From assembly GCF_963921235.1 (NCBI RefSeq), contig NC_086106.1, positions 25,296,001 through 25,360,000 of the forward strand: DNA of 64,000 nucleotides, given 5' to 3'. This document shows, in pieces, positions 3,398-63,094 of this stretch (the first letter of the stretch is position 1; each line of letters opens with the position of its first letter). The position numbers and the translations under genes were made by a program. A model generated the notes under the pieces. The model was not told where the DNA came from. It worked only from the letters and a program-made list of their open reading frames with translations, and did not search any database. This DNA comes from Mobula hypostoma (Eukaryota).

Positions 3398-4139
3398 GGC
3401 ACAGTTATTCTGGCTTTGTTGAAAGGCCGTCTAGTTCTAAGTAGTTACTATTAATTGACAGATATTGTAAAATGAATGAACATCAGCGGCACACGTTTTT
3501 TATTAACATAGCAGGCATTATCTTACTGAAGAATAGGCTGATCAATTTGTCTTCTGAAGCTACAACTTTTTTTTTATTGCTGGTACACTTTACTATGCAT
3601 TATCTTATTATTTTATCTTGTACTATCTCGACAAACCGGACAATGGACTGTTCAGCAGGAGATGTGACAATAATAAAGGATTTCTAATTCCAATTTGTGA
3701 GTCACTGTCCCATGCACGTAATTAGATTCCACATGGATCTTAGCTTTGACCATAAGCGTTTCTAATGTCACCTCATCCAATTCTGTCTCAGGATAAAATG
3801 TCTCTGTATCTACAGGTTTCCCCACCCCCACTCCGCCATCCTCACTATAATACTGTACCTCAAGGATGTAGAATGAATTTTTCATAGACGATGTCGAAGG
3901 TTCGCTACCTTGATATGGCATTCCAGGCTGAAGAGTTTTGGAGGATTGAATTCCCTGAAATTCATTGAAAAATAAGTAATTTCAGTACGCGTTGCATTCC
4001 ATAGTTTGGGCGCCTTTTGCTATTGCGTTTCGTCCAATTAATTCGAGCACACTACAGAACTCACTTTGCAGTGCGATCCTTCCAGTTTCACAGCACAGGA
4101 AGTGCTCTAGTGAGAAGTCATTGCATCATCGACGACAGG

Positions 4140-4568
4140 GTTTTCTGCAGACCCGTTGTCTCCCTGCTGTAACCTGTGGCACAGGGAAACACGGTGTTCT
4201 CTGAAACAAGTGCCCCAGAGATATTCAAAATGAGCCACCGTACTACCTTTCTACGAACCAGCCGTAACCCACAACGGTCCTTCTGGAGACGTATCTAGCT
4301 TGCCTGAACTTAAGTAAGTATTTTTGAAATGACCCTCGATGCTGGCTGTAACAATATCTTGGGTGTAATTAGAGTTCCTTCTTTCCTCGGTCGTTAATTC
4401 GGGAGGGCCCTACATCACTGCAAGTTTTCCTTATTTCCATGGAATAAAAGACGGAATGTTTGAACGTTCCTGGCTCCTATTAACACAGGAAACAGTAGCT
4501 ACCCGATTACACAGAGACTCACCAGGCAACAAGGTGGAAACAATTATTAAGGAACAAAAATCATGCAT
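4140..4568 (-). pseudogene. TRAV-like pseudogene (leader 4523-4568; RSS 4140-4178)
   Basis: Leader MHDFCSLIIVSTLLPG|GTGAGT; acceptor mutated (AT); FR3 LNISGALVSENTVFPCA; RSS CACAGGT-23-GCAGAAAAC; deletions in FR1. Confidence 0.75.
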
Positions 4569-5516
4569 GACTTTAGGCTTCTGGTTCGATTGAAAAGCAG
4601 ATTAGTTCTTAACAATTACTATCAATTCATATGTACAAGAGGAAGAGATGATGATCATAGGCACTCTTGACTTTGTTTATGATCGGGCACATTGCCCTAC
4701 TGAATGGTTGGCTGGTAAAAAGTGGGCCCAACATTCTTGACCACCAATCAGAATCGACTTTATCTTTCAGTTTATCACTGATTGTGTTTTCACGCGAAAA
4801 AAAAAACAAAAACGCCTGTAGCAGGGTGGTGGAAACTACACTGGATATTCGAGGTATGTGCTCTCAAACGTTTGCATGTTTTCCTTTTGGAAGCAATGGG
4901 GTTGCCGGTTGGTTAGGGAACATAATGTCTTTGCTGATGCTGTCTGCCAGTTGTGTAGAGAAGTAGGCCAAAGCATAGAGAGAGGTTGCAGTGAAGTGTC
5001 TTCAGTTGCGTGATGGATAACATAGCAAAGCGGTTAGTTGGGATGCTATTACATCTCATAACGTCGGCGTTCAGAGTTCAATTTCAGCGTTTGCAAGGTT
5101 TCTGAACTTACATCGTGTGTAATGATTGTTTTTACAAGCTCTTCCGTTTCTTTCCACTGTCCAAGTTATGATATTTAGTTGTTGTAAGTTGTTCTTAGAA
5201 TAAGTTAGAGTTAATTTTGGGTTGACAGGATTTGCTGCATTGGCGCGAGTGGAAGCATCTTAAAGTCCTACTCCACGTTGCATCGTGATGAAAATAAGTA
5301 CATAAGTATCTAGATATCCCGAAAATGGAATTCAAAGTTCCTATTCGGCTACGCCATCAAACCAAGAACAGTTTTACAGTCTTCAAAACATTTTACCACT
5401 GAGTGTTTCACGCTTATGTCGAGTATGTGACAGTCAGTGATTGCCGGGTACCTCCCGCTTCTAATATTGCAACAAATAGCACACTCCAGTGAGGGCCAAA
5501 AACATCCATCCCGCAT

Positions 5517-5984
5517 GGTCTTTGACCAGGCCCAGTGTCTCACTGCACCACAGTGTGCTGCATCTCAAAGAGATAATCTCCGGAATCCGACACAAGAGCT
5601 CCAGAGATATTCAAATGAGTTGCCTTATTGCCTTGCCACAAATCAGTGGTAAAACTTACCGAACATTCTGGAGGTCGGTACAGATCTACTGAGCTGATTA
5701 TCCTCAGCAAGTATTTTGGATCTTCCCCACGATGCTGAATGCACCAGAAAATCGTAAAATCGATACTACAAGTGCAGTTCAGTGTTATGGCCAATGCTTC
5801 TTCAAGCATTAAATCAGAAGGCTCCTGTTTCACTAAATCCTTCGTTCTCGTTTCTGTAAGAAAAAAAGAAAAACATGTGTAAGCGTCGTTGTCTTACAAT
5901 AAAGCGACGGTGTATGATTGTCAATCACAGAGGCTCAATGTTCAGCACAGCTAATACAATCAGAAAGGAACGGAGAGGACGCAT
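5517..5984 (-). pseudogene. TRAV-like pseudogene with open V exon (leader 5939-5984, V exon 5556-5853, RSS 5517-5555)
   Basis: ETRTKDLVKQEPS...TLNCTCS..IFWCIQHRGEDPKYLL...LNISGALVSDSGDYLF; second Cys replaced by Phe; donor GT>TT; RSS CACTGTG-23-TCAAAGACC. Confidence 0.85.
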
Positions 5985-6919
5985 GGTGCTGGAACAGTCG
6001 ATCGATCAGTGGAATCCTTCTCTCTGGGTAAGACCTGGGACGTTTCCCTGCTAGACCATTGGATGATACAGCGGGATGGAGTTATTTAGGCAGATATCGG
6101 CATCAGCCTTCGGTCTTTTCTTCTTTGCTAATTTTACCGCGCCACAAGTCATCAAAGTCATCAGAGAATTTGACAACTCTCGCTGCCCTAACCGCTCTCT
6201 ACACCATATATGCCTTTCTTTTTGTAGTTCTCTCCCTACTGTTCGTGTTTTTTTTTCTACTCATGCTCACTGCTCCCTTGCGTTCGTTGCGTCATTGAGA
6301 CATTGAGTCTCCAATTACTATGGGGTCTGATTCAGAATCGCTCCTGAATTCTTTCTCCTACTTACTGAGCACGAACTCTCACTCGAGGTTGTTCTTCCCT
6401 CTCCCTCTTCGTCTCGCTCATCTATCCCCCCATTCCCGCTCTCGTCATCTTCTCCGGATTCCTTTCTTGGTCGTTCAGTGTCTGATCTCTCTGTCTCCCT
6501 GTCTCTCTGCCTCAGTCCCGCTGTTTATCAATTCCATCTCTCTCCGTCTCTTATGAACTAAGACGAAGACAGTTGTCCTGACAAAATTGAACGGAAAACC
6601 GTCTGTGTGTGATTCACCGATATATACAAAGATATTTTGTGTTCTACATTTTATTGGAGAGCTACTGTTGGAAGAAGAACCGGTTGCTGCTACTGGACGT
6701 CTGGTCCATCGGTGCCGTGTTCCAGTGAAGAACATGGACTAAAGACCGTTGCATCTACTTGCGTACTTTTTTCTGAATTCAAAGAATGGAAATTTAAAAC
6801 TGAAATATTGATCAATGTTGAAAAAAGGTGAAATAGCGCCAAAAAAGACTAGACATACTTAGCTCGTCTAAAAAAGGTCTGAGGAGACAGACAGTTCAAG
6901 CTTTTTATCAGCACCATCA

Positions 6920-7021
6920 GACCATAAGATCATAAGACAAAGGAGCAGAGGTCGGCCATTCGGCCCATCAAGTCGGTTCCGCCATTTTATCATGCGTTGA
7001 TCCATTCTCCCATTTAGTCCC
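6920..7021 (-). mobile_element. 3' tail of the CR1 at 11903-14340, split off by the LTR insertion
   Basis: The reverse complement matches the 3' end (59360-59470) of the same-family CR1 and joins seamlessly with 11903 across the TCCC duplication. Confidence 0.85.
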
Positions 7022-7886
7022 TGTTACGTACCCCGTAACTGGGTTGCCAAACCAGCAGAAATGGATCATTCAGTTGGAGTCTGGAGTACTAGAACTAAGA
7101 AAGTTTTATTAAGGAAACAAGCAACACAGTAATCGAAAGGATAATAAATGCAACAGTTCAGTGATGATAAACACACATTTGCACAGAATTAAGATAACAG
7201 CATCAATCAAGCTCTATCGTTGTCTAGGGGTAAATGACCAAATTTCAAAATGACTCAAAGTTCAGTTCGCAGTAATCGTTTCCATGGCGATGGACAACGT
7301 GGGGGAAGAGAGACAGAGAGAACAGGAACAACTCATCATTCAGAACGGCTTCACTCACAGACCAGCAAGATGGCTCACAGACCAGCGAGATGGCTCACAA
7401 ACAGCTTTTGGGCAGGTCCTTGGTGATGTCACCTGAGGTCACCGACTGTGACCCCTCCTCCAGATGCGGTCGATCCTCTGCAGTGAACCCGGCACCCAGG
7501 CAAGGGCGGACACACACCGGGTTCCCGCTGATCGTACCTTTCCACCCTGGTCGTTGTTTGTTACTTCTCACCCACTCGTGAGAAGCGCACCGCTTCCAGG
7601 GTCTCGTTAGCTCGGGTGGCGTGTGTGTCTGTCTTAGCGAACCTGTCCCTTTTTATCCCCCTGCTGGGGTATCGCCTGTCCATCACTTCAAACAGTTCAG
7701 GGTTCAAAGGGGGGAGCCGCTCCTGACAGCTCTTCCTCCCACATCCCTTCATTACACATCTCCAGACGCTGCTCCATTGTTCCTTATCTCTCCTTCCCCT
7801 GAGGGCAGGTGGCAGACCAACTGCTGATGCCACTGATGCTAGCCCAGGCCAGCAAACATCTTAATTTTATGTGTATTCTCGTAACA
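7022..7886 (-). repeat. 3' LTR
   Basis: TGTTACG...GTAACA termini; direct repeat of 11038-11902; AATAAA on the minus strand at 7105-7110. Confidence 0.95.
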
Positions 7887-7900
7887 CTTCCCCCCTTTAA
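7887..7900 (-). promoter_or_regulatory. Polypurine tract
   Basis: Minus strand TTAAAGGGGGGAAG directly abuts the 3' LTR. Confidence 0.85.
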
Positions 7901-8058
7901 GGATTTTTACCGGGAGGTAAAAATTACAAACATTACTACATTATCTGATACATACACAATATACATCTTTAACAGTTATTTAGCTAATACAGAGAATTTG
8001 AAGCTGTCAACACCTTGACAGACAGTCATCACATTTTCTGTTCCTTTTACACGTGTTA

Positions 8059-10938: not shown

Positions 10939-11014
10939 TTCTGCTGTTTGTCTTTTCTTTCTTTCGGGAATTTTAACCCAATCAATTTACTCCGTCCCAA
11001 ATTTAGCGTTCAAA

Positions 11015-11033
11015 ATCGCGGACGAGAACCCCA
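11015..11033 (-). promoter_or_regulatory. Primer-binding site, tRNA-Pro-like
   Basis: Minus strand TGGGGTTCTCGTCCGCGAT versus canonical tRNA-Pro PBS TGGGGGCTCGTCCGGGAT; 4 nt from the 5' LTR. Confidence 0.8.
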
Positions 11034-11037
11034 CTTA

Positions 11038-11902
11038 TGTTACGTACCCCGTAACTGGGATGCCAAACCAGCAGAAATGGATCACTCAGTTGGAGTCTGG
11101 AGTACTAGAACTAAGAAAGTTTTATTAAGGAAACAAGCAACACAGTAATCGAAAGGATAATAAATGCAACAGTTCAGTGATGATAAACACACATGTGCAC
11201 AGAATTAAGATAACAGCATCAATCAAGCTCTATCGTTGTCTAGGGGTAAATGACCAAATTTCAAAATGACTCAAAGTTCAGTTCGCAGTAATCGTTTCCA
11301 TGGCGATGGACAACGTGGGGGAAGAGAGACAGAGAGAACAGGAACAACTCATCATTCAGAACGGCTTCACTCACAGACCAGCAAGATGGCTCACAGACCA
11401 GCGAGATGGCTCACAAACAGCTTTTGGGCAGGTCCTTGGTGATGTCACCTGAGGTCACCGACTGTGACCCCTCCTCCAGATGCGGTCGATCCTCTGCAGT
11501 GAACCCGGCACCCAGGCAAGGGCGGACACACACCGGGTTCCCGCTGATCGTACCTTTCCACCCTGGTCGTTGTTTGTTACTTCTCACCCACTCGTGAGAA
11601 GCGCACCGCTTCCAGGGTCTCGTTAGCTCGGGTGGCGTGTGTGTCTGTCTTAGCGAACCTGTCCCTTTTTATCCCCCTGCTGGGGTATCGCCTGTCCATC
11701 ACTTCAAACAGTTCAGGGTTCAAAGGGGGGAGCCGCTCCAGACAGCTCTTCCTCCCACATCCCTTCATTACACATCTCCAGACGCTGCTCCATTGTTCCT
11801 TATCTCTCCTTCCCCTGAGGGCAGGTGGCAGACCAACTGCTGATGCCACTGATGCTAGCCCAGGCCAGCAAACATCTTAATTTTATGTGTATTCTCGTAA
11901 CA
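11038..11902 (-). repeat. 5' LTR
   Basis: 865-bp near-identical copy of 7022-7886. Confidence 0.95.
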
Positions 11903-14340
11903 TCCCACACCCCCGCCTTCTCACCATAACCTTTGATGCCCAGATGGCTACTCACATGCCTATCAATCTGTGCCTTAAATATATCCAGTGACTGGACCTC
12001 CACTGCCGCCCGTGGCCACGAATTGCACAGATTGATACACTCTGCTTAAAAAAAAAAATCTTCTTATCTCTGTTCTGAACGGGCTCTCTTCAATCCTTAA
12101 GTCATGCTCTCTCGTACTAGACTCCCCCATCATGGGAAACAACTTTGCCACATCCACTGTGCTCATGCTTTTCAACACTCGAAATGTTTCTATGCGGTCC
12201 CCCTCATTCTTCTAAACTACAAGAAGTACAGTCCAGGATCGGTCAAACGTTCCTCATATGTTAATCCTATCATTCTAGTGAATCTTCTCTGAACCCTCTC
12301 CAACATATGCATATCCTTTCTTAAATCATGAGCCCAAAACTGCTCCCAGTACTCCAAGTGTGGTTTCACTAGTGCCTAACAGAGCCTCAACATTACATCT
12401 CTTCTCCTATACTCTATTCCTCTAAAAATGAATGCCAACATTGCATTCGCCTTCTTCACCGCCGACTCAGTCTGGAGGTTAAACTTAAGGTATCCTGCAC
12501 GAGAACTCCCAAGTCCCGTTGTATCTCAGAACTTTGAATTCTCTCCACATTTAAATAATAGTCTACCCGTTTATTTCCTCTGCTAATGTGCATGACCATA
12601 AACTTTCCAACATTGTATTTCATTTGCCAGTCCTTTGCCAATTCTCCCAATCTATCCAAGTCTCTCTGCAGACTCTCTGTTTCCTCAGCACTACCGGCCC
12701 CTCCACCTGTCTTAGTATCATCAGTATACTTAACCACAAAGTCATCTGTTCCATAATCCAAATCGTTGACGGACAACGTAAAAAGAAGCGGCCCCAACAC
12801 GGACCCCTGTGGAACACCACTGGTAACAGGCAGCCAATCAGAATGGGATCCCTTTATTCCCACTCTCTGTTTCCTGCCAATCAGCTAACGCTCTATCCAT
12901 GTATGCTACTTTCCCGTAATTCCAGGGGTTCTTATCTTGATTAGCAGCCTCGTGTACGGCTCTTTGTCAAAGGCCCTCTGAAAATCCAAATACACGACAT
13001 CCTGTGCATCTCCCTTCTCTAGCCCTCTTGTAATTTCCTCAAAAAATTGCAATAGCTCTGTCATGTAGGATTTTTCTTTATTGAAACCATGCTGAGTTCT
13101 ACCTATCTTGTCATATGCCTCCAGCTACTCCGTAACCTCATCATCGACAATAGACCCCAACAACTTCCTAACCACCGATGTCAAGCTAACAGGTATATAA
13201 TTTCCTTTTCGCTTCCTTTCCCCCTTCTTAAATAGCGGAGTGACATTTGCAATCTTCCAGTCCTCCGGAACCATGCCAGAATCCATTGACTTTTGAAAGT
13301 TCATTGCTAATGCCTCCGCAATCTGTACAAATATTTCCTTCAGAACACGAGGGTGCATTCCATTTGGTCCGGGAGATTAACCTAACTTTAGACTATTCAG
13401 CTTCCTGCGTGCTTTCTCTGTCGTTATTGTGACTGCGCACACTTTTCTCCTCCGACAGCACCGAGTGCCCGGTATACTGCTGATGTCCTCCTCGGTGAAA
13501 ACTGATGTAAAATGCTCGTTCAGTTCCACCGCTATCTCCTTATCTCCCATTAAAATTTCTCCGGCATCATTTTCTCTCGGTCCTACATCTACTCTCAACT
13601 GTTTTTTACTCATTATATACTTGAAAAAGCGTTTAGTATCCTCTTTGATATTATTTGCTAGCTTCATTTCATAGTTCATTTCTTCCTGATTAATGACCTT
13701 CTTAGTTTCCTTTTGTAAGTTTTTATAAAATACCTTATCCTCTGTCTTCCCACCATTTTTGGCTTTCTAGTTTGCCCTCTCCTTTGCATTTACTTTAGTC
13801 TTGACTTCTATTCTTAGCCACGGTTGCATCCTTTGTTGCATTGCTAAATTTCTTCTTCTTTGGAATATATCTGTCTTGCACCTTCCTTTCACCTCGCATA
13901 ATAAACTCCAGCCAATGCTGCTCTGCCGTCCTTCCTGTTAATGTCACTTTCCAGTCAACTTTGGCCAGTTCTTCTCTCATGTCACTGTAATTTCCTTTAC
14001 TCCACTGAAATACAGACACATCGGATTTCGGCTTTTCTTTCTTAAATATCACAGTGAACTCAATCATGTTATGATCACTGCCTCCTAAGGGTTCCTTCAC
14101 CTCAATCTATCTACTCATCTCCGGTTCATTACACGCACCCAATCCAGGGCAGCCGATCCCGCAGTGGGCTCAACAACAAGCTGTTCTAAAAAGCAATTAC
14201 GGTGACATTCTACAAATTCTCTCCCTTGAGATCCAGTGCGGACTGTATTTTCCCAATCCACTCGCATGATAAAATCCCCCACAATTATCATAACACTCTT
14301 CTTCTAACAAGGCTTTTCTATTTTTGTTGCGCACCTTCCA
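11903..14340 (-). mobile_element. 5'-truncated CR1 LINE (same family as 55480-59470), disrupted
   Basis: Fragments EPLGGSDHNMIEF, HPRVLKEI...GNYIPVSLTSVV and GVPQGSVLGPLLF...KYTDDTK. Confidence 0.92.
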
Positions 14341-14409
14341 GATTGGCCGCAAAAAGGGGTCCTCCAGTGTGGTCCAAACGTTGGAGGGTCAAAGATTTTT
14401 TTCCTCCCT

Positions 14410-18072: not shown

Positions 18073-18118
18073 CTTCACTGTTGCCTTCAAGTGAGAGCTC
18101 TTTGTATCACACATGACC

Positions 18119-19830: not shown

Positions 19831-20622
19831 TCGCTCTGCTAAATGGACGTTGAATTGGGGAAGTCACAGATTAGACTATTGAGAACCCATCTGAATGGAA
19901 GTACTACACTCTCTGCTTAGTTATCATGCACTTAATTATATTGTATTTGTCAATATCACCCCCTCTTCTTTATTGTACTTTAATTAACACTTCATTTCTA
20001 ACAAAACGTCTCCTTCTTTGTTCCCTCTTTTGTTACTCTCCTATATTTTCGTCGTTGTGTCAGTCAATTACTCTCTGTCTGCCTTTGTATTCCAATTTGC
20101 AATATCTGTAAATCATCAATGCATCTTTAAAGTCGTTGTGGGAACGTCCATTAATCTAATCCCAGCTCAATCGGTATTGATTTTCAATTCGAAAAATAAA
20201 TATCGATTTATATCCACTTTTAGGAAGCTAATGTCAATAGACTTTACCTGAAATATATCTTCTTCAGAGCATTTGGTCATACACCTTTTTGTCCGATGCT
20301 ATTTAGCCATATAGAACCTCAGTATCTCCAGTTTGCACTCCTCGTCACACTTGAGGGGTGGGGGAAAATGAATTCCAGCAAAAAATAACCACAAGGTAAT
20401 GTTGTAGGCAACAGAGAGATATGAACATCGAGATATAGTGGAAATGTTCCGGAAAGCTGCCACAATATCCCTAGATAAGTTAAATTCAAGAAGTTTTCCA
20501 ACAGTCTGCGGGCATTTTGCTGCTGAATACAGCGTTTCAATCGACCACGTGATCCTCATGCTTTGTGATACTGCTGTACCATTTTTCCAGCAAAAGGCGC
20601 TCTCAAGTGATCACGCATCGCT

Positions 20623-22806: not shown

Positions 22807-23746
22807 CCCACTCATTCCTTCTGTTACCTCAGTTTTCCTCGCTTCCTGTCTTCTTACTCTGATTTTTCTTTCTCCGCCGCTGTCTGATCTCCCTCTTTGT
22901 GTCAGTCCATTATTTTTGCCTCCCCATCTCTCAGTCATCCTCCTTTTCATCTCCTGTCCTTTCTCCCTCTCACTGTCATTTTAAAGTGGAGGTGAAGGTA
23001 TTTATTTTTGCATTGTTTTAGCGCTTAATTTTGTACAACTTCGATAAGCTGATCAATGATTTCATCTGTTAAATCGTAGTCGATGCAATCATCGTACAAG
23101 AATAAACAGAAATATCCAGCAAAATGACCCACCTGGTGATAACTTCAGATCCGTTAAATCTGTTTGGGAAACCAGATTATGCAAGCTATCACTCTGCTGT
23201 GCTCCCATACCCTCTCTTCATCTCTGTCTGTCTTTTGTACTGAAAATGGCTTCAGAGTATAAATCTATGGGTAGTATGTGAACATTGGCAGGTTCTGTTG
23301 CATTATCTAAATACTCAGTATAAATCAATGTAGCTGCTGCAGCATCCTTAATATCAGCAGCATGCCACTTGCAAATCTTTGTCAATCTGAAGACCACCAT
23401 TTTGCCCACCTGTGTTTTCCTTTCGTCAGTAATTATACAATTTAAATATGCCCCGCTTACATTCTCACTATTTCTCACTGCAGATACTGGAACAAAGTGT
23501 CCAAAAAAAAAAGGTCAGGCAGTGTTGTCAATCGTGGTATGGAATTGCAGCAAAACAGTTTGCGTGAAAAAAAAAACATTTCAGTATCCCGGAAATGCAT
23601 TGTAAAGTTTCAATTTAGTTGCGCATTGGAATCAGGAACTGCTCCTTTAGATTTGGGACGTTCCACTGCTGAGTTCAGCGCGTTTAAGTAGGGCACGTGA
23701 CCATAGCTGAATTCTCGGTGTGCCCCTTCCAGCTTCCCGGAAAAAG

Positions 23747-23760
23747 GCGCCCTCCAGTGA
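23747..23760 (-). promoter_or_regulatory. CTCF-like motif 3' of a V segment
   Basis: TCACTGGAGGGCGC on the minus strand. Confidence 0.65.
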
Positions 23761-24890: not shown

Positions 24891-25912
24891 AATTCGACGG
24901 GTAAATCTGTTGACCATTGGACCATAATATATAGGAACAGAATTAGGCCATTTGTCCGATCGAGTCTGCACCGCCATTTCAGATGAGACAGTGTGGTAAT
25001 GGGATTTTTTGAAACGGTAAACATACCATTAAAATTAGAGTTTCAGAAATTGGAAATAAAGCTTGGGAAACAGATACAATGAATTTGTCTTTCTTCGACA
25101 GTAATCATTTGTTCTCTCTATTTGTCTCTTCCACCTGAGGGAAAACACAAAAGTCTAAAGTGGAAAAGCAGATTCCACTGTGCACAAGTATACATTCTTC
25201 CTGATTATAGGAGTATTGAACTGTAGGATGAAATTGAATCTCAATCCCAATATAACTGGCACTGATCGTGTTCTTTATTTCCTGGCTGCACAGCATTTGG
25301 GCACTATGCAGTCGCCTGCATGTATTTTAACCATAAAGTTACTTTCAACACTGAACCTGTTTGAAACAGCATGGGAGCACATCGATGAACATAGTATCTG
25401 TATGCTCTATCATGCTGAGCATCCACAGGTTCTGTCGGATGATCTAAATCATGAGCAGCTGTTGTATCTTCCCTAATTCCAGTGGGGTGTAAATTTCTGG
25501 GTTACAGTAGCATGCCACTTGCAATTCTTTGTCATTCTAGAAAGCACCAATTTTGTCACCCTGTGCTTTCCTTTGGTCAGCCATTGACCACTTTAAATAT
25601 ATACCGGTTCCACTCCGTCCGTATTATTTGTCCTTGCAGACGAACGAACAAAGTGCTCAAAGACAAGGCTGTCCATCGGTATATACCCTTAGAGCAAATG
25701 AAGACGAGCGAATGCACTTTGTGTTATTCAGGAAATGAATTACAAATTTCCAGTTCGGTTGTGCCTTGTAATCGGAAACTGTTCATTCCGCTTCGGCAAA
25801 TTGTGCTGCTGTTTACTGTCGCTTAAGCAGGGCACGTCACTATGATTTCTGGGTGCAGCCCTTCCAGATTCGCCGAGAAAAGGCGCCACCAGTTTCTGCA
25901 TCATACTGTACT

Positions 25913-26382
25913 AGTTTTTGTCCGGTCCCTCCGTCTCCATACAACAGTGTGCTACTCACTGCACAGAGATACCTGTCAGAGTCCGACACTTGTGCTGCAC
26001 AGTTATTCAACTGAGCCGTCCTGCTGACTCTCTGCAAACTCGTGGTAAACCTGAATGGGCAATCTGGATGTCGATGCATTCCTCCATTGCTAGACATCTT
26101 CAGCAAATAATGTGGACGTTCTCCGCTATGTTGAATGTACCGAACTATATATAGATCATAGTCACTGTAATTACAGTTCAGTGTTACGTTCTGTTCTTCC
26201 TTGGCTTTAAGTCTGGAGGATCCTGCGTCACTGAATCTTTTCCACTCGCTCCTGCAATAAAGGACAGAATACGTCAACAACATCGGCTTGTATTGAACGC
26301 CAGGGAAATTCGCTGGCACCGTTTGCAGACACTCACCGGGCAGCACAGCCAATATGATCATTATTAAACAGAGGGACGTCAT
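25913..26382 (-). pseudogene. TRAV-like frameshift pseudogene (leader 26337-26382, V exon 25952-26251, intact RSS 25913-25951)
   Basis: 1-nt deletion in FR1 after DPPDL; conserved Trp>Arg; both Cys kept; CACACTG-23-ACAAAAACT. Confidence 0.9.
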
Positions 26383-28295: not shown

Positions 28296-28498
28296 TTCAC
28301 TATATCCTTACAGCAAAAGAAGATGGGCGAATGCACATTGCGTGAATGAACTGCAAATTTCCAGTTCGCTTGCGCTTTGCAATCGGAAACTGTTCCTTCA
28401 GCTTCGGCGCCTTGTGCTGCTGCTTACAGCGCGCTTAAGCAGGGCACGTGACCAGCGATGGTTTCCGGGTGCGCCCTTTCCAGATTCGCCGCGATAAG

Positions 28499-28512
28499 GC
28501 GCCCTCCTGTGA
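28499..28512 (-). promoter_or_regulatory. CTCF-like motif 24 bp 3' of the RSS nonamer
   Basis: TCACAGGAGGGCGC on the minus strand. Confidence 0.65.
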
Positions 28513-28536: not shown

Positions 28537-28575
28537 AGTTTTTGTCCGGACCAGCCGTCTGCATACAACAGTGTG
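28537..28575 (-). promoter_or_regulatory. 23-bp-spacer recombination signal sequence
   Basis: CACACTG-23-ACAAAAACT. Confidence 0.92.
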
Positions 28576-28995
28576 GTACTCACTGCACAGAGATACCTGC
28601 CAGAGTCCGACACCAGAGCTTCATGGATGATCAATTGAGCCGTCTTGCTGTCTTTCTGCATACTAGCGGTAAACCGATTCATTCGATTCAGTACTTTAGT
28701 GCTAGATACCTCCAGCAAATAATGTGGAGGTTCTCCACCATGTTGAATGTACCAAAAGATATATGGATCATACTGAGTGTAATTACAGTTCATTGTTATG
28801 TTCTCTCCTTCCTTGGCCGTTATGTGGGGAGGATCCTGCGTCACTGAATCTTTCCCACTCGCTCCTGCAATAAAGTACAGAATACATTAACAACGTCGGC
28901 TTCAGTTGAACGGCGGGTAAATTTGCAGGCTACCTTCGCAGACACTAACCAGGCAGCAGAGCTAGTGCAATCATCAATAAACAGAGGGAAATCAT
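28576..28995 (-). CDS. TRAV: Intact TCR alpha/delta V segment (leader 28950-28995; intron 28865-28949; V exon 28576-28864)
   Basis: MISLCLLMIALALLP/GASGKDSVTQDPPHITAKEGENITMNCNY...IFWYIQHGGEPPHYLL...SDSGRYLCAVST; GT-AG intron; Cys/Trp/Cys intact; RSS present. Alpha versus delta usage cannot be told from the germline. Confidence 0.9.
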
Positions 28996-29225: not shown

Positions 29226-29259
<34 letters not shown>

Positions 29260-30160: not shown

Positions 30161-30881
30161 CTGATCACTCGGAGTTGAGCCGTTGATGTCAGAGCTGAGC
30201 CTTTATAACCACCGACGTGAATAGAACTAATACAGTACTGTTTATGTATCAGTCACTTTCGTTCATTCAGGTGCTTTGCCGTTCGGTGTGGGCGATAATT
30301 TCTCACCATTCGTCACGGTCCCTGACCCTCCGAATTTTAGTTGTTGCCTCCACTGTTTCTAACCATGATGTTATTCCAACTATCATTTCCATTATCTGTC
30401 TGTCTCTCCTTTTTGTTTTTTCTTCCAGCTTTCCAGTTGTAACTAAATGTTCTAATGTCTCTGTTCGTAAAATAACATTTATTTATCTGCACTTTTAGGA
30501 AGCTAAAGTCAATAGACCCCAACTGAAATGTATCTTCATCAGAAGCATTTAGCGTGACAGCATGTCCAATACTGTCTAGTCATATACAATCTCAGTATCT
30601 CTAGGTTTCACTCTTCTTCACTGTTAATCCCACACGGTAGTGAAAAAATGAAGTCTCGCAAAAAAGTTAACCACAACATATTCTTATCGGTATCAGCGGG
30701 ACATGGACACCAACATATAGTAGAAATGCTTCGGAAAGCCGCCTCAATATCACTAGGTAAAACTAAATTCAAGATGCGTTCCACAAGTTCGGTCGCATTT
30801 TGTTGCTCAATGCAGCATTTCAAATTGACCACGTGATCCTCATGCTTTCTGCGTACAGCTGTTCCAGTTCCCCAGCAAATG

Positions 30882-30895
30882 GCGCCCTCTAGTGA
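30882..30895 (-). promoter_or_regulatory. CTCF-like motif 12 bp 3' of the RSS nonamer
   Basis: TCACTAGAGGGCGC(CA), 13/14 match to CCACTAGAGGGCGC. Confidence 0.75.
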
Positions 30896-30907: not shown

Positions 30908-31490
30908 GGTTTTTGTCCAGACCCGCTGCTTCCCTGCAACACTGAGCGGTCCTTTATACAGAGGTACTGTGTACACCAGACTCAGGGACATTAATTCCAG
31001 AGATATTTGAATGAGCTGACACTGCGTCTGTGTGTAACAGCTGTAAACCTCGCCGGACGTTCTGAGAAAGCTCCAGTTTTCCTCAGCCATAGAGCTTCAG
31101 CAGCTGTTTAGGAGATTCTCCGCTATGCTGAGTGTATCAAACATGTTTGTCTTAGTTCGTGTGTAACTGCATTTTACTGTTATCATCTGACTTTAGTCAA
31201 CCGAGAATTTAGGAGCAAACAGAGGAAATCTGCAGATGTTGTAATGTCAATCAACGCAGCAGGCGAGGCAGCATCTATAGGAAGACGTACAGTCGACGAC
31301 GTGTCTTGGCCTGCTGAGTTCACCAGCAATTGTAATGTTAATTTAGGAGCATCCTGATCATTGATTTGTACTTACGCGTTCCTGCAATAAAGGACCGAAG
31401 GAAATGACTTCCCTAACTTGCACTGAATTACGCTCTCGCTGGTTATGTGTGCAGCATCTTTGCTGTCAGGATGGCGAATGAAACCTATAA
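30908..31490 (-). pseudogene. V pseudogene family B, copy 2 (V exon 30947-31381, with a 122-bp insertion)
   Basis: RSS CTCAGTG-23-ACAAAAACC; homologous to 20623-21060. Confidence 0.85.
31218..31339. mobile_element. Short Penelope-like-derived insertion with 12-bp TSD
   Basis: AATTTAGGAGCA duplicated at 31206-31217 and 31340-31351; absent from the paralogous B copies. Confidence 0.75.
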
Positions 31491-40271: not shown

Positions 40272-40602
40272 TATGACAGCAAATCCAATGCTGTCTAGTT
40301 ATTTGCAACCTCAGTATCTCTAGGTTGCACTCATCTTCACTTTAACCCCTCAAGGAAGTCAAAAATGAAATCCAGCAAAGAATTAACACAAGATATTCTT
40401 ATAAACATCAGAGAGACATGGACACCACCACATAGTAGAAATGTTTCGAAAAGCTGCCACAATATCCCGGGGTAAAGCTAAATTCGAGATGTGATCCGCA
40501 TCTCAAGATTTAGTCGCATTTTGCTGCTGAATGTAGCATTTCAAATCGACCACGTGTTCGTCATGCTTTTTGCGTACAGCTGTTCCAGTTCCCCAGCAAA
40601 CG

Positions 40603-40616
40603 GCGCCCTCCAGTGA
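40603..40616 (-). promoter_or_regulatory. CTCF-like motif 12 bp 3' of the RSS nonamer
   Basis: TCACTGGAGGGCGC. Confidence 0.65.
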
Positions 40617-40967: not shown

Positions 40968-41465
40968 CTGCAATAAAGAAGAGATACTCTTTCAGATAAT
41001 CCGTTGGATTATCTAATACTCAGTATAAATCATGAGTAGCTGTTATATCTTCCTTAATTTAATGGGTTGCTCATTTCTCGGTTTCGTTAGCATGCCACTT
41101 GCAATTCTTTGGCATTCTGGAAGCACCAGTTTTGCCACCCTCTGTTCTCCATTGAGCACTTTATATATATCCCGGTTTCACCCCATGAGTTTTATTTTTC
41201 CTTGCAAACAATCGAACAAAGTGCCAAAGACAATGTCAGTCAAGGCTGTTCATCGTTATATACCCCTACAGTAAAAAAAAGATGGGAGAAAGCACTTTGC
41301 ATTATTCAGGAAATGAATTGCAAATTTTCAGTTCGGTTGCGCCTTGTAATCAGCAACTGTTCCTTCAGCTTCGGCGCCTTGTGCTGCTGCTTACAGCGCG
41401 CTTAAGCAGGGCACGTGACCATGGATGATTTCCGGGTGCACCCCTTCCAGATTCGCCGTGAAAAG

Positions 41466-41479
41466 GCGCCCTCCTGTGA
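41466..41479 (-). promoter_or_regulatory. CTCF-like motif 24 bp 3' of the RSS nonamer
   Basis: TCACAGGAGGGCGC. Confidence 0.65.
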
Positions 41480-41503: not shown

Positions 41504-41542
41504 AGTTTTTGTCCGGACTCGCCGTCGCCATACAACAGTGTG
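41504..41542 (-). promoter_or_regulatory. 23-bp-spacer recombination signal sequence
   Basis: CACACTG-23-ACAAAAACT. Confidence 0.92.
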
Positions 41543-41962
41543 GTACTCACTGCACAGAGATACCAGCCAGAGTCCGACAGGAGAGCTTCATGGATATTTA
41601 ATTGAGCCGTCTTGCTGTCTTTCTGCATACTAGCGGTAAGCCGATTCATTCGATCCATTACTTTAGGGCTAGATACCTCCAGCAAATAATGTGGAGGTTC
41701 TCCACCATGTTGAATGTACCAAAAGATATATGGATTACTGTAAGTGTAATTACAATTCAGTGTAATGTTCTGTCCTTCCGTGGCCGTTAAGTCGGGAGGA
41801 TCCTGCGTCACTGAATCTTTCCCACTCGCTCCTGCAATAAAAGACAGAATACATCAACAACGCCGGCTTGTATTGAACGCCGGGGAAATTCACTGGCCAA
41901 CTTCGCAGACACTCACCAGCCAGCATAGCCAATGCAATCATGAATAAACAGAGGGAAATCAT
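41543..41962 (-). CDS. TRAV: Intact TCR alpha/delta V segment (leader 41917-41962; intron 41832-41916; V exon 41543-41831)
   Basis: MISLCLFMIALAMLA/GASGKDSVTQDPPDLTATEGQNITLNCNY...IFWYIQHGGEPPHYLL...SDSGWYLCAVST; GT-AG intron; RSS present. Confidence 0.9.
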
Positions 41963-42265: not shown

Positions 42266-42709
42266 GTGTCTTACTGGCTTTGTTACCCTGTTCTCTGCAA
42301 AATCAGAACCTATTCAAAAACTTATCCAGGTATAATCATACCCAATTAAGCATTTTTCACATGGTCGCTTATTTGACATCGACAGTATCCCGCTGTAAGT
42401 AGTTTATTTATTTATTTATTTGTTTGTTTAGACAGTTATTTGGTGATAGTTCACACAATAGTCCCTTAGGTCAACATTTTTTAGTCTTCTGGTATTGAAA
42501 CACACGATGATATTACAGGCAACAGAGAGACATTGAGAACAACATATAGTAAAAATGCTTCGGAAAGCCGCCACAATATTCGTAGGCACATCTAAATTCA
42601 AGAAGTGATCCACAGGTTCGGGCGCATTTAGCTACTGAATGCAGAATTTCAAATCGACCACGTGATCTTCATGCTTTCCGCTGCAGCTGATCCATTTCCC
42701 CAGCAAATT

Positions 42710-42723
42710 GCGCCCTCTAGTGA
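42710..42723 (-). promoter_or_regulatory. CTCF-like motif 12 bp 3' of the RSS nonamer
   Basis: TCACTAGAGGGCGC. Confidence 0.75.
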
Positions 42724-45066: not shown

Positions 45067-45396
45067 GGTTTTTCTCGATGCCCACTGTCTCCCTGCATCA
45101 CTATGAGATCCATGGCGTAGAGGCAAACGCCGAATTCAACTTGAGAGCTCCTCAGGCATTCAGAGGAGCCACTTGGCTGACTTTCTGCAAACTAGCGGAA
45201 AATCTCATCTGATATTCCGGAGAGCGCTCAAGATTTCGTAATCCATATACGAAATTTTGGAGAGTCTCGTGATGCGAGTGTACCAAGAACTGTTTGCAGC
45301 AGTGTAATTATGATTACATGACAGTCTTAAGGCCGACGATCTTGCTCAGCTGTTATTTAAGAGAGTGCTGAGTTACTGAATCGTTCGCTCTTATTC
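45067..45396 (-). pseudogene. TRAV-like pseudogene (V exon 45106-45396)
   Basis: IRANDSVTQ; WYT; RFSASLQKVSQVAPLN; RSS CATAGTG-23-AGAAAAACC; stops. Confidence 0.75.
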
Positions 45397-45509: not shown

Positions 45510-45810
45510 AAGTGCCGTCTACATGGCTTTGAGATACACAGGGGTGCTCGACACGAGAGCTCTAGCGATATGGAAATGAGCCGTTTTGTTATATTGCTTC
45601 AAACTGGCTGCAAATCTATCTGGAAATTTGTTGAGCGGCTCCATCTTGTCTGGCTTATGTTTCTTCAACAGATATTATGGGGATTACGTACGAAGCTGAG
45701 TGTAGCAAAAATCATGTGCATTAGTGATTGTGTAAGTACAGTTAACTTTTCTGACCGCCTGAATTCATCTTCAGCCACTAATTAAATAGAATCCTGTATC
45801 ACGGAGTCTC
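45510..45810 (-). pseudogene. TRAV-like pseudogene, RSS lost
   Basis: GDSVIQD...NCTYT...FPDRFAASLKQYNKTAHFHIARALVSSTPVYL; several stops. Confidence 0.75.
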
Positions 45811-46722
45811 CGTACTCCCCCCGCCCCCCCCCCACCCCCCTCTCTCTCTCTCTCTCTCTCTCACTCCAACTCGCTGTGCACACAGCAATGGGAGCCATGT
45901 GTTGCCGGTTCCTGCCTCTCCACCTACATGTTTGCAGATAACACCACGGTGGTGCGATGTGAATCCAATAACGATTAGACGCAGTACAGGAATGAGAAAA
46001 AGATTTTAGTAACAAGGTGTCAAGAGGGCAGCCTGCACTGAATGTCAACAAACCAAAAGAGCTGCACAGCAGAGGGCGAGAGTATGCAGAATTCATTTGG
46101 AACGAACATCACTGAAAACACGTCTATATCCAACTACAAGCAGGCCACATCCGGAAATGCTCCGCAGTGCGTCGACTTCGACAGAGGCTAAAACTATCTG
46201 GCACGACTTTCCATCTTCAACAATTGATATCAAGGCACCATAGAAGCAACCTATCCAGATTCATCATGGTCCATTCTGCGCTATCCGATAGAGCATAAAT
46301 TTCAGGCTCTTGGATACAGCTTAGCACATCACAGAACCAAACCATTGATAACCTTGGACTCTAAAAGGTCATCTCGCAAATTCGGTAAAGAGCCATTGTA
46401 AACAAAAACCGATCCGCTCCACGCCCAATCCATGATGCAAGTGCTTCTGGAATTAAGCATTGAGGAAGCTGCTGGGCTAATTTTTTGCTGCAGTCGGGAT
46501 CTTGACGAATCGCACAGAATTGCCTTTCAGGTACCTGGTGAATGCGTTGCATGTCTACTATTTGGGTACGTGTTGAATTCAAGAACTGTTGCAAGCCTGG
46601 ACGCTTTTACTGCTTTTTCTGCCCAGCGGAACCAGTGACTCTCGCAAATCTCTGGTTACGCCACTTTCAATTTCTCGGGAAAAGGTACGTTTTAGTGAGC
46701 TCTTATGATATAACCCATGGTT

Positions 46723-61100: not shown

Positions 61101-61236
61101 GGTACACCTGGTGCATATATGATTATACGAGAAGCTGGAGATCTCTCTGAATCTCACGTCTCACACAAAGAATACAATACCTCCCCTGGAACCATTCTCG
61201 CTGCTCTACCTACCGGCAGCCGAAGAATGAAGAATG

Positions 61237-61283
61237 AAGGATAAGAAGAAGAGGAAGAAGAAGAAGAGGAAAAAGAAGAAGCA
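61237..61283. repeat. (AAG)n microsatellite
   Basis: Visible tandem AAG. Confidence 0.9.
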
Positions 61284-61404
61284 ACGTTTCAGGCACTTAT
61301 CTTACCCAAGCCTGATGAAACCAATTCAAATTCTTCCCGCTCCAACAATTGCTGCTACACTAGCAGTTGCCCTATTTGTATTCACCCTTCGGGGTGAATG
61401 CCGT

Positions 61405-61482
61405 TTACTGATAGACCGCAGTTCAAAGTTCCGACGATAGGCTGTTAATAACCATTGTTTTGCACCCGTGGGTTCGAATACT
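61405..61482 (+). pseudogene. Decayed tRNA-Ser(GCT)-like sequence
   Basis: GACGATAGGCTGTTAATAACCATTGTTTTGCACCCGTGGGTTCGAAT versus tRNA-Ser GGCGATGGACTGCTAATCCATTGTGCTCTGCACGCGTGGGTTCGAAT (recalled). Confidence 0.55.
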
Positions 61483-63094
61483 CAGTTCAATTTGGGTAAT
61501 TTCTCTTTCTACTTATCAGAATCGGTAAAGTATTTTCCCCACAAGTTAATAACCAAGGGTCAAATTCAATCTAAAATTGCGGTCACCTGAAGGAGGAAGT
61601 ATGGAACTACAGTTCCGAACTACTCAAATGATCTGAAAATAGATATGGAAAGAAAGAGTCTTCAGGCCTCTCATCTACACGTTGTTTTGAAGTTGTTAAA
61701 GCGCACGAACTCTTCGTCTGCAGAGTGGGTTTTGAATACTGTATACTGGTGCTGACGTTTAGTGGCGAACAAGGATGAGAAAATCTAGTAATGAGGGTCT
61801 CCTCAAATCAATATAATGAGAAAACCATTTTGTTACTGAAAAGAAGTGCAACAGCGCATTCTTTTTTTCCGATTTCCTGAACGAGATACAAAGACGTTTT
61901 GAACAGAAAAAACATGAGAGTGTCAACACCCACCCTGACAACCTCAACGCCACTGAAATACAGACACGGCTGTGAGTGCAATATTCGTCTCCAGAAGAGT
62001 GAAATAACGAAAATCATTTCGACGGAATGGTGTCGGAGGCCATGACCTTAGATATTGCACAGTTCAGCTGGCGGCTTCTTTTCAAACGTTTTGAGCCTCT
62101 CATTGTTTTAATCTGATTCTCTCATCTGCCTTTAGAATGCAACCATCCGATCCGCACCTATGAAAAACATTGTAACACATGACCCCGAGAATTCATTCCG
62201 ATCTGTACTGATGCACAATACAATGCTTTCCATATGGAAGCATTTTCTTGCCCCAGTCTACAAGAAGCTCCAGAGTAATGGACACAATTCAATGATTTCA
62301 AACTCAAGGATTTCAAACAATGATAATGTCTATATTTTCGCCACCTGGGTAAAGCTTTCTGCAAAGGCAAACGCTGAAGATCCAGGGTAAAGGGCAGCAC
62401 CTACCATGCCGACATATGCGCAATGATTTTTGAACATACATTGTTGTGACTTTGCACTTTTTCATCTACCTGCAGTGCACTTTGACTGCAGCTGCTACAT
62501 TCTATTCTGCCTCTTTCCGTTTCGCTCTTTTTCCCTCTCCCTCTCACTGCTCCCGTCTACACAGCGTGAGAAAATGACAACAGTCATAGCAGCCGTAAAT
62601 TACGTCACGTAACACGTAGTCCCTTTTTGAACATATCAACTTAAGTTATACGTATATGTCGTAACATCATTTAATGTAATGCATTCCCACTAGTCATGCA
62701 CACAAAATACCCATTTACCCCCACTCTTTCCTTTCCTTTCCTGGTCCATAGACTCTAGCTCTATCTTTATTTTGATCACTTGCGTTTTGATGTGATGTCG
62801 GATCCATTCTTGTCTTGACATGTACAGCTTCTGCATTTGCAAGTTCCTCCCTCATCTTCACTGTAAAAGCCTCTAAAATCTCTGGCAAAGTTTCAAAAAC
62901 GATGCCCATCAAAAATATCAGGGAGGTACGGATTTGTAGATAAGCGGGGAAAATGGACTTTCACGCAGATCTTTTGCGAATACGTTTCGCATTCTTAAGT
63001 TGATCACGTGACCGTGGAGGATTTGTGTGTGAGTCCCTGGCAGTTTTCCGGCTAAGGACCCCCACTGGCGCGTGCTCATTGTATAACGGAGGTC

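What the first reader, a model, noticed from the sequence alone, without database searches (positions are those of the whole stretch)
4100..63068. Fixed-distance, fixed-orientation CTCF-like element just 3' of the V-segment RSSs
Seen: on the V-sense (minus) strand a TCAC(T/A)(A/G)GAGGGCGC-type 14-mer (or a decayed version) lies exactly 24 bp past the nonamer in family-A genes (28499-28512, 41466-41479, decayed 5479-5492, 18081-18094 and 46685-46698; ~25 bp at 23747-23760). It lies exactly 12 bp past the nonamer in all four family-B genes (20597, 30882, 40603, 42710), with weaker versions at ~4100 and 63055. Known: the CTCF core is CCAC(C/T)AG(A/G)(G/T)GGC(G/A)C, and mouse D-proximal IgH VH genes carry forward-oriented CTCF elements a few tens of bp 3' of the RSS that stall cohesin-driven RAG scanning, whereas mouse Trav CTCF sites are mostly promoter-associated. 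Inference: this fish TCR V array may use an IgH-like RSS-proximal CTCF code, which would point to loop-extrusion-guided V(D)J recombination being ancient in jawed vertebrates.
Basis: partly seen in the sequence, partly recalled or inferred. Interest (0 to 1): 0.85.

Follow-up and report, generated by a model that had tools for sequence, protein, structure and literature searches.

The report
CTCF-like site behind ray TCR V signals
Behind the recombination signal of most T-cell-receptor V segments in this ray, and in a skate, sits a short conserved motif that looks like a binding site for the genome-folding protein CTCF, an arrangement so far described for mammalian antibody heavy-chain genes; binding is untested, and the two intact V genes in this window carry only a weak version.

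Summary
All twelve listed 14-mers are present, all on the V-sense (minus) strand. They lie 12 bp (family B) or 24-25 bp past a 23-RSS nonamer. TCACWRGAGGGCGC with up to 2 mismatches gives 8 hits against 0.98 expected.

The motif is a real conserved island. Across five deep V lineages (ray A, ray B, two little-skate V genes, one unnamed elasmobranch contig), pairwise identity is 0.79 in the motif and 0.83 in the nonamer. It is 0.30 in the linker between them and 0.40 just after the motif.

The CTCF reading is only partly supported in this window. Only three copies score strongly on a CTCF matrix (15.6-20.2 bits), and all three sit on pseudogenes. The two intact V genes score 7.6 bits. The skate and unnamed-contig copies score 16.9-18.3 bits on open V genes.

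Outside batoids the motif is sporadic: 3 of 62 V genes in shark, amphibian and ray-finned fish loci. Ancient origin in jawed vertebrates is therefore not shown.

The closest known system is the RSS-associated CTCF sites of mouse and human IgH. CTCF occupancy is untested. The scan had already noted this module elsewhere in the same genome (s1-141899, s1-142025).

The parts
28576..28886 (-). V exon of V28575 (family A), open reading frame ending ...YLCAVS
   Evidence: Translation. Pfam V-set E=3.5e-13. An RNA contig of run X5 covers 28584-28799 with 0 differences.
28537..28575 (-). 23-RSS of V28575: CACACTG-23-ACAAAAACT
   Evidence: RSS scan.
28498..28512 (-). Motif variant TCACAGGAGGGCGCC, 24 bp past the nonamer. 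Weak CTCF match: 7.6 bits, and the 14-mer has 3 mismatches to CCASYAGRKGGCRS.
28445..28451 (-). E-box TCACGTG about 60 bp 3' of the motif
41543..41853 (-). V exon of V41542 (family A), open frame ending ...YLCAVS
41504..41542 (-). 23-RSS of V41542: CACACTG-23-ACAAAAACT
41465..41479 (-). Motif variant TCACAGGAGGGCGCC, 24 bp past the nonamer, 7.6 bits
41412..41418 (-). E-box TCACGTG
30908..30946 (-). RSS-like signal of pseudogene V30946 (family B): CTCAGTG-23-ACAAAAACC. The heptamer lacks the CAC.
30881..30895 (-). Motif TCACTAGAGGGCGCC, 12 bp past the nonamer. Strongest CTCF match in the window: 20.2 bits, p about 1e-7.
30830..30836 (-). E-box TCACGTG
42709..42723 (-). Motif TCACTAGAGGGCGCA behind pseudogene V42774 (family B; RSS-like signal at 42736-42774), 18.4 bits. 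E-box at 42659-42665.
40602..40616 (-). Motif TCACTGGAGGGCGCC behind pseudogene V40667 (family B; RSS-like signal at 40629-40667), 15.6 bits. CACGTG at 40551-40556.
20596..20610 (-). Decayed motif TCACTTGAGAGCGCC behind pseudogene V20661 (family B), 5.5 bits. E-box at 20546-20552.
23746..23760 (-). Motif TCACTGGAGGGCGCC, 25 bp past the nonamer remnant of V23824 (heptamer and spacer lost), 9.1 bits. E-box at 23694-23700.
5478..5492 (-). Decayed motif TCACTGGAGTGTGCT (CpG lost) behind V5555, 1.1 bits
18080..18094 (-). Decayed motif TCACTTGAAGGCAAC behind pseudogene V18157, 3.5 bits
46684..46698 (-). Decayed motif TCACTAAAACGTACC behind pseudogene V46761, -12.6 bits
4099..4113 (-). Decayed motif TCACTAGAGCACTTC behind pseudogene V4176, -7.4 bits
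63054..63068 (-). Divergent copy ...CGCCAGTGGGGGTCC behind V63131, 5.3 bits. Palindromic E-box GGTCACGTGATC at 63004-63011.
25875..25951 (-). V25951 (family A, frameshifted): RSS CACACTG-23-ACAAAAACT. The 5' half of the motif is removed by an 8-bp deletion, leaving GGTGGCGCC.
14328..14369 (-). Orphan copy of the block (CCACACTGGAGGACCCCTTTTTGCGGCCAATCTGGAAGG) with no V or RSS upstream, next to purine-rich repeat sequence
45067..45105 (-). RSS (CATAGTG-23-AGAAAAACC) of pseudogene V45105. It has a linker remnant but no motif.

Best explanation
The window is part of a ray T-cell-receptor alpha/delta-type V array, with all V segments on the minus strand. Directly behind each 23-RSS lies a conserved block of about 190 bp. 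Its best-kept part is a 15-mer with ancestral form TCACTAGAGGGCGCC, always on the V-sense strand. It sits 24-25 bp past the nonamer in most lineages, 12 bp in family B after a 12-bp deletion, and 31 bp in one skate V.

Most likely this 15-mer is a CTCF-binding element that works like the RSS-associated CTCF sites of mouse and human IgH. In that model, bound CTCF points its cohesin-stopping side toward the J-C end. It stalls loop extrusion coming from the recombination centre, so the adjacent V RSS stays longer next to RAG.

Shown here: presence, orientation, spacing, island-like conservation across paralogous lineages and two to three species, and a strong matrix match in seven copies.

Inferred: CTCF binding, the cohesin-stalling mechanism, and any effect on V usage.

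In this window the element is mostly in decay. Only three pseudogene copies remain strong, and the two intact V genes carry a two-base variant that may bind weakly or not at all.
For: - Enrichment and orientation: 8 of 8 matches lie on the V-sense strand behind RSSs, against 0.98 expected. Matrix hits of 14 bits or more: 5 found, 0.56 expected; 3 of the 5 are these sites.
- Matrix scores: 20.2, 18.4 and 15.6 bits in ray family B. 16.9 and 17.4 (twice) in three little-skate V genes, which are open-reading V genes with CAC heptamers. 18.3 in an unnamed elasmobranch contig.
- Island of conservation: in five deep lineages, pairwise identity is 0.79 for the motif, 0.83 for the nonamer and 0.76 for the heptamer. 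It is 0.30 for the linker and 0.40 for the next 25 bp. In twelve lineages, motif 0.77 against linker 0.43; the motif window ranks 6th of 267.
- Neutral decay cannot explain the scores: with a per-site change probability of 0.4 or more, a score of 16.9 or higher survives in fewer than 0.6% of simulations.
- The unnamed contig's site (TCAGCAGATGGCGCC) differs from the ray and skate form only at positions that the published consensus CCASYAGRKGGCRS leaves degenerate: S, Y and K.
- Linker length of 24-25 bp is kept across ray A, skate V2 and the unnamed contig, although the linker sequence is near random. The same is reported for IgH RSS-associated sites in PMC6746451.
- Flanks far from the block (+400 to +890) align no better than shuffled sequence, while the block (+39 to +230) is as conserved as the V exon: 0.45 against 0.44-0.47.
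- Loop-extrusion signatures are already reported for the little skate (PMC10115646, cited).
Against: - The two intact, and in one case expressed, V genes of the window carry TCACAGGAGGGCGCC, which scores 7.6 bits. This variant has G where the matrix has its near-invariant central A.
- Within family B the number of changes in the motif is what neutral drift at 15-23% divergence predicts. There is no sign of ongoing selection in this window.
- A non-optimal T at the first core position is kept in 10 of 12 lineages. The 5' half (TCAC..GA) is better kept than the G-rich 3' half. Pure selection for CTCF affinity does not predict this.
The tool-based check with the published IUPAC consensus finds only two listed sites within 1 mismatch.
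- No ChIP, ATAC or Hi-C data could be reached.
- The position of J-C, and of partner sites in the opposite orientation, is outside the window.
Confidence: 0.55

Rival explanations
1. The block is a conserved composite regulatory element bound mainly by factors other than CTCF. Candidates are a USF/TFE-type bHLH-zip protein on the TCACGTG E-box and proteins on the GGAA-rich stretch. Such an element could open chromatin or drive non-coding transcription at the RSS. On this view the CTCF likeness of the 15-mer is partial or secondary.
For: - The conserved region is about 190 bp long, not 15 bp.
- TCACGTG sits at a fixed distance of about 60 bp 3' of the motif in 8 ray copies. Seven of the window's 13 TCACGTG matches lie in these blocks; 4.8 matches are expected in the whole window.
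- A further island, CAGCAGCAAAATG, is shared with skate V1.
- The non-optimal T at core position 1 is conserved, and the intact V genes score weakly for CTCF.
- CpG observed/expected is 0.82-0.99 in the block against 0.62-0.68 in the flanks.
Against: - The E-box is absent from the skate and unnamed-contig copies, where the 15-mer is strongest.
- The 15-mer is by far the best conserved part.
- Its variation in the unnamed contig follows CTCF degeneracy.
- No RNA coverage of the block in the one informative RNA run.
- I could name no other factor whose motif fits the 15-mer. YY1, E2F and ZNF143 were checked by eye only and did not fit across copies.
Confidence: 0.2
2. The motif has no function of its own. 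It is flank sequence carried along with V-gene duplications and looks conserved because elasmobranch DNA evolves slowly and the copies are related.
For: - Within families, homology runs through the whole unit for more than 1 kb.
- The fixed distance within a family is simply inheritance.
- Within family B the motif changes at the neutral rate.
- Most copies in this window are on pseudogenes and many are decayed, often by CpG loss.
Against: - Between deep lineages the linker 5' of the motif and the bases 3' of it are near random (0.30 and 0.40-0.25), while the motif is at 0.79.
- Far flanks align no better than shuffles.
- Strong sites persist in skate and in the unnamed contig on V genes only about 47-50% identical in protein to the ray's.
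- The neutral simulation gives less than 0.6% survival of such scores.
Confidence: 0.12
3. The element acts directly on the recombinase rather than on chromatin folding. On this view it is a protein-bound or bent DNA segment at a set distance from the nonamer that modulates RAG/HMGB1 binding or 12/23 synapsis. Ciccone et al. speculated along these lines for the IgH sites.
For: - Linker length is conserved while its sequence is not.
- PMC6746451 raises this idea for IgH RSS-associated sites.
Against: - Distances of 12, 24-25 and 31 bp are not a single phase.
- No structural or biochemical evidence here.
- The single-strand fold is no better than shuffles, z = -0.05.
Confidence: 0.05

Closest known systems
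RSS-associated CTCF-binding sites of the mouse and human IgH V region (Ciccone et al. 2019, PMC6746451; Loguercio et al. 2018, PMC5859386, Table 2; function in Ba et al. 2020 preprint 10.1101/2020.01.01.891473 and references there)
   Same: - The site lies a few tens of bp 3' of the V 23-RSS nonamer.
- It has one orientation relative to V transcription.
- It is as conserved as the RSS, while the linker keeps its length but not its sequence.
- Its presence follows V-family phylogeny.
- A CpG sits late in the core.
- The 5' flank GA(C/T)C resembles the mouse VH sub-consensus GACCAGCAGGGGGC.
   Different: - The locus is TCR alpha/delta-type, not IgH.
- The taxon is batoid fish, not mammals.
- The distance is 24-25 bp (12 or 31 in some lineages) instead of 17-19 (mouse) or 19/48 (human).
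- The first core base is T rather than C.
- In the ray it is accompanied by a fixed E-box.
- CTCF binding, looping and effect on V usage are shown for IgH and untested here.
CTCF sites of the mouse Tcra/Tcrd V region
   Same: Same type of locus; many CTCF sites among the V segments.
   Different: In mouse they lie mostly upstream of V promoters or between genes, and in both orientations (PMC5859386 Table 2; PMC6439775). Here they are RSS-proximal and uniform in orientation. The Danionella locus looked mouse-like: strong matrix hits mostly 0.3-1.3 kb upstream of V heptamers.
Chicken beta-globin 5'HS4 compound insulator (CTCF site FII plus USF site FIV); recalled from memory, not tested
   Same: A CTCF-type site and a USF-type E-box lie within about 100 bp.
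   Different: No evidence here for insulator or barrier activity. The E-box is not conserved in skate.

Membership tests
RSS-associated CTCF-binding element (IgH type) | Sequence matches the CTCF core motif | tested here: inconclusive
   Strong matches: 3 ray copies (15.6-20.2 bits), 3 skate copies (16.9-17.4) and the unnamed contig (18.3). Marginal: the two intact ray V genes (7.6) and V23824 (9.1). Failed: 6 decayed copies. With the published consensus CCASYAGRKGGCRS and up to 1 mismatch, only 30882 and 42710 qualify.
RSS-associated CTCF-binding element (IgH type) | Fixed short distance 3' of the RSS nonamer, with linker length kept and linker sequence not kept | tested here: met
   12 bp in family B. 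24-25 bp in ray A-type genes, skate V2 and the unnamed contig. 31 bp in skate V1. Linker identity is 0.30 against 0.79 for the motif.
RSS-associated CTCF-binding element (IgH type) | Uniform orientation relative to V transcription | tested here: met
   8 of 8 pattern matches are on the V-sense strand. The same orientation holds in skate and in the unnamed contig.
RSS-associated CTCF-binding element (IgH type) | Conserved about as strongly as the RSS itself | tested here: met
   Motif 0.77-0.79, nonamer 0.83, heptamer 0.69-0.76.
RSS-associated CTCF-binding element (IgH type) | Bound by CTCF (and cohesin) in vitro and in lymphocyte precursors | not testable with these tools
   No ATAC run was listed. 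No ChIP or Hi-C data were reachable.
RSS-associated CTCF-binding element (IgH type) | Presence or strength predicts V usage; convergent partner sites near the D/J/C end | not tested
   J-C is outside the window. Within the window, motif strength does not track V integrity: intact V genes score 7.6, pseudogenes up to 20.2.
TCR alpha/delta-type V gene segment | V-set domain exon ending in Y-x-C, followed by a heptamer-23-nonamer signal, in a tandem array | tested here: met
Pfam V-set E=3.5e-13. ...YLCAVS + CACACTG-23-ACAAAAACT. About 14 V units in one orientation. The nearest annotated relative is a little-skate V-set protein at 50% identity.

The most novel reading that the evidence does not exclude
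Rays and skates run their TCR alpha/delta V arrays on an IgH-like logic, with a cohesin-stalling CTCF site coupled to nearly every V RSS. In addition, the coupled module (CTCF-like core plus a CACGTG E-box about 60 bp further on) is homologous to the one behind a Danionella V gene. That gene carries CACAAGAGGGCACC at +30 and CACGTG at +88, against +24 and +86 in ray family A. If homologous, RSS-coupled CTCF sites would date to before the split of cartilaginous and bony fishes and would have been lost from most V lineages since.
Probability: 0.12. Interest if true: 0.85.

Novelty: new variant of a known kind. Interest (0 to 1): 0.6.

Why it matters
RSS-coupled CTCF sites are central to how mouse proximal VH segments are chosen during RAG scanning. 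So far they have been described for mammalian IgH, plus two mouse Vbeta genes near an RSS.

A selectively maintained, same-oriented CTCF-type motif behind TCR V signals in skates and rays would show one of two things. Either this coupling arose more than once, or it is much older than mammals. It would also show that the coupling can serve a TCR alpha/delta locus, whose mouse counterpart uses promoter-side sites.

The little skate is a laboratory animal with Hi-C data, so the idea is directly testable.

Full-text searches found no paper on CTCF at RSSs in cartilaginous fish. That covers only the held library.

Tried and rejected
- Transposon origin of the block: BLAST of the A and B blocks against the window finds only V-associated copies and one orphan. 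The repeats start only beyond about +236. Rejected.
- Structured RNA or DNA: no Rfam hit in the window. The fold is no better than shuffles. No RNA coverage of the block.
- A second CTCF site in the ray block: the best second forward scores are 2.5 or lower. Only the unnamed contig has a real second site, at 14.6 bits. The plus-strand hits at 30869 and 20584 are the reverse reading of the GGCGCC-centred block and lack the invariant G.
- Footprint against a related species: contigs of organism B were laid on 25600-31500. They are short and mix paralogues (85-90% matches even from the window's own organism), and the list of differences was truncated. Not usable, and the second call was not spent.
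- Word-based protein searches with the ray V and with P0144 found almost nothing. No ATAC run was listed. The accessions of L005 and L006 occur in no held paper, so L005's species is unknown. It aligns best to skate V2, and L006 aligns best to bamboo shark.
- nhmmer with a batoid block profile on non-batoid loci: the top hit is the Danionella V15578 site, but at E=1.3, which is not significant by itself. A bamboo-shark hit has no V upstream.
- Sturgeon versus paddlefish site: the flanks are about 93% identical throughout, so the comparison says nothing about selection.
- YY1, E2F, ZNF143 and STAT readings of the flanking bases: checked by eye only, and none holds across copies.

Full report
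**What the window is.**
The window holds about 14 V-set gene segments or remnants, all on the minus strand. They are separated by retrotransposon pieces: RT, endonuclease and gag-like ORFs.

Two V genes look intact: V28575 and V41542. Both end in ...YLCAVS and carry CACACTG-23-ACAAAAACT. The V28575 exon is matched without a difference by an RNA contig that stops near the V end, as a rearranged transcript would.

The four family-B genes are pseudogenes. They have frameshifts, and three of them share one stop codon. Their heptamer is CTCAGTG or worse.

The closest annotated protein is from the little skate Leucoraja erinacea, at 50% identity. The assembly gaps at 22629-22806 and 32799-32942 are intergenic. 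Each is more than 900 bp from any motif, so no measured spacing crosses them.

**The observation.**
Distances from the nonamer are 24 bp (25 at V23824) and 12 bp in family B. TCACWRGAGGGCGC with up to 2 mismatches occurs 8 times, always on the minus strand behind a V RSS. The chance expectation is 0.98.

The 12-bp versus 24-bp difference is one 12-bp indel in the linker. Within a family the fixed distance is therefore inheritance, not independent evidence.

**How CTCF-like the sites are.**
Scores:
- Family B: 20.2, 18.4 and 15.6 bits, plus 5.5 for the decayed V20661 copy.
- V23824: 9.1 bits.
- The two intact family-A genes: 7.6 bits (p about 1e-4).
- All other copies: 5.3 or lower.

The window has 5 hits of 14 bits or more against 0.56 expected, and three of them are these sites. 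As a check free of my memory, I used the consensus CCASYAGRKGGCRS printed in PMC6746451. It finds only 30882 and 42710 within one mismatch. So "low matrix scores" holds for most copies in this window, including both functional genes.

**Conservation.**
Within families the whole unit is homologous for more than 1 kb. Family A and family B are not BLAST-alignable in intron or far flanks. For eight lineage representatives, mean pairwise identity is:

| Region | Identity |
|---|---|
| V exon | 0.44-0.47 |
| RSS | 0.54 |
| Block at +39..+230 | 0.45 |
| +400..+890 | 0.24-0.28 (shuffle level) |

Inside the block the 15-mer is the peak.

**Related sequences.**
A full HMMER search with the V28575 protein led to genomic loci through the look-up of encoding contigs.

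*Little skate (L002).* All three V genes, with open exons and CAC heptamers, carry a forward site. TCACTAGAGGGCGCC lies 24 bp past the nonamer (16.9 bits). CCTCTAGAGGGCGCA lies 31 bp past it (17.4 bits, in two tandem copies).

*A Logan contig of unknown species (L005; a near-identical copy is L007).* It aligns best to skate V2. It has TCAGCAGATGGCGCC at 25 bp (18.3 bits) and a second forward site (14.6 bits). Its three differences from the ray and skate core fall on the S, Y and K positions of the consensus.

Pooled pairwise identity across ray A, ray B, skate V1, skate V2 and L005:

| Region | Identity |
|---|---|
| FR3 | 0.66 |
| Heptamer | 0.76 |
| RSS spacer | 0.56 |
| Nonamer | 0.83 |
| Linker | 0.30 |
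| Motif | 0.79 |
| Next 25 bp | 0.40 |
| Next 45 bp | 0.25 |

At the divergence the linker implies, a simulated neutral 19-mer keeps 16.9 bits or more in under 0.6% of trials. This is the same picture that Ciccone et al. describe for IgH RSS-associated sites. There the site is as conserved as the RSS, and the linker is conserved in length only.

**Limits of the pattern.**
V genes with a forward site of 12 bits or more within 100 bp of the nonamer:

| Locus | V genes with a site |
|---|---|
| Bamboo shark | 0 of 2 |
| Shark-like metagenome contig L006 (a TCACTGAATCAG relic at the right place) | 0 of 1 |
| L001 (GCA_933207985.1; species not named by the tools, an anuran by my recollection) | 0 of 12 |
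| Bonefish | 0 of 19 |
| Loach | 0 of 3 |
| Paddlefish | 1 of 4 |
| Sturgeon (the orthologous V; CCGCTAGATGGCAG at +47) | 1 of 8 |
| Danionella | 1 of 13 |

The systematic coupling is thus shown only for batoids. Origin in the gnathostome ancestor is not supported by this sample.

Within family B the number of motif changes (0, 1, 1 and 2) fits neutral drift at the copies' 15-23% divergence. The family-A variant replaces the near-invariant central A. The window therefore shows the element largely after selection has lapsed, or with relaxed need.

**Other parts of the block.**
A TCACGTG E-box lies about 60 bp 3' of the core in eight ray copies. Seven of the window's 13 TCACGTG matches are in these blocks, against 4.8 expected in the whole window. 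It is absent in skate and L005. A CAGCAGCAAAATG island follows it and is shared with skate V1. CpG observed/expected is 0.82-0.99 in the block against 0.62-0.68 around it. This is modest, and the copies are not independent.

**Mechanism.**
The best reading, at about 0.55, is a CTCF-binding element of the IgH RSS-associated kind. There it would stall cohesin-driven extrusion so that the adjacent RSS dwells at the recombination centre. Several dozen D-proximal mouse VH segments use such sites. In mouse TCR alpha/delta the CTCF sites sit mostly upstream of promoters. Every functional step here is inference.

Rival readings:
- A composite regulatory element bound mainly by other factors (0.2).
- A functionless inherited flank (0.12).
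- A direct effect on RAG (0.05).

**Novelty and prior notes.**
Searches of the held literature found nothing on CTCF at RSSs in cartilaginous fish. Loop extrusion itself is already inferred for skate and lamprey. The scan noted the same module before, on other DNA of this genome (s1-141899, s1-142025). I used those notes only as leads.

Noticed in passing
window 20546-20552, 23694-23700, 28445-28451, 30830-30836, 40551-40556, 41412-41418, 42659-42665, 63004-63011: A CACGTG E-box (TCACGTG in seven copies, the USF/TFE type) lies at a fixed distance of about 60 bp 3' of the CTCF-like core in eight ray V blocks of three or more families. It is absent from the skate and L005 copies.
   Followed up: partly
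L008:15578-15720 (Danionella): One of 13 V genes has GCAGCACAAGAGGGCACCC (12.9 bits, forward) 30 bp past the nonamer and CACGTG at +88. This nearly matches the layout and core (12 of 14 bases) of ray family A. It is also the top nhmmer hit of a batoid block profile in non-batoid loci, though at E=1.3. It may be chance or deep homology.
   Followed up: partly
L004:25290 and L009:2736 (paddlefish, sturgeon): Orthologous V genes with heptamer CACAGCG carry a forward CCGCTAGATGGCAG site (15.3 bits) 47-48 bp past the nonamer. The flanks are about 93% identical, so selection cannot be judged.
   Followed up: partly
window 30946-31260, 40667-40980, 42774-43090, 20660-20980: Family B is a pseudogene family that kept duplicating after it died. 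Three copies share the same in-frame stop (YG*GKLE), a 5-bp insertion near the second Cys, and a CTCAGTG heptamer.
   Followed up: partly
window 28513-28536 and equivalents; L002:3484-3508: The otherwise unconserved linker holds a half-conserved (GA)TGCA(A/G) that starts 12 bp before the core: TGCAGTGAG in skate V2, TGCAATGAC in V4176, TGCAAAAGG in V28575. It faintly recalls the upstream CTCF module (TGCAGT...), but I know that module only from memory and the spacing may not fit.
   Followed up: no
window 30869-30887 and 20584-20602 (+ strand): Read on the opposite strand, the bases after the core (TCCCCAGCAAATGGCGCC) give a second, overlapping CTCF-like match (12.1 and 10.5 bits) that shares the GGCGCC centre. 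It has A at the near-invariant G position.
   Followed up: partly
window 27373-28357 and 31116-31312: These are very high-copy repeats, with summed contig word depth of 1e5-1e6 in all DNA runs of both species. The first is an RT-bearing LINE fragment that begins about 236 bp behind the V28575 RSS and marks the end of the conserved block.
   Followed up: partly
window 7022-11902: An element with 20-bp terminal repeats (7354-7399 and 11370-11415) holds a 959-aa ORF with SCAN and zinc-knuckle domains (gag-like).
   Followed up: partly
L008 (Danionella), 0.3-1.3 kb upstream of the V heptamers at 999, 6608, 12599, 18279 and 24214: Strong CTCF matrix hits (13.4-19.0 bits) lie on the promoter side of several V genes. 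This is the mouse Tcra-like arrangement, in contrast to the batoid RSS-side arrangement.
   Followed up: no
window 45250-45800: A V remnant (…VYLKAM) has its RSS and downstream block replaced by a SINE-like insertion. It is directly followed by a second pseudogene, V45105.
   Followed up: no
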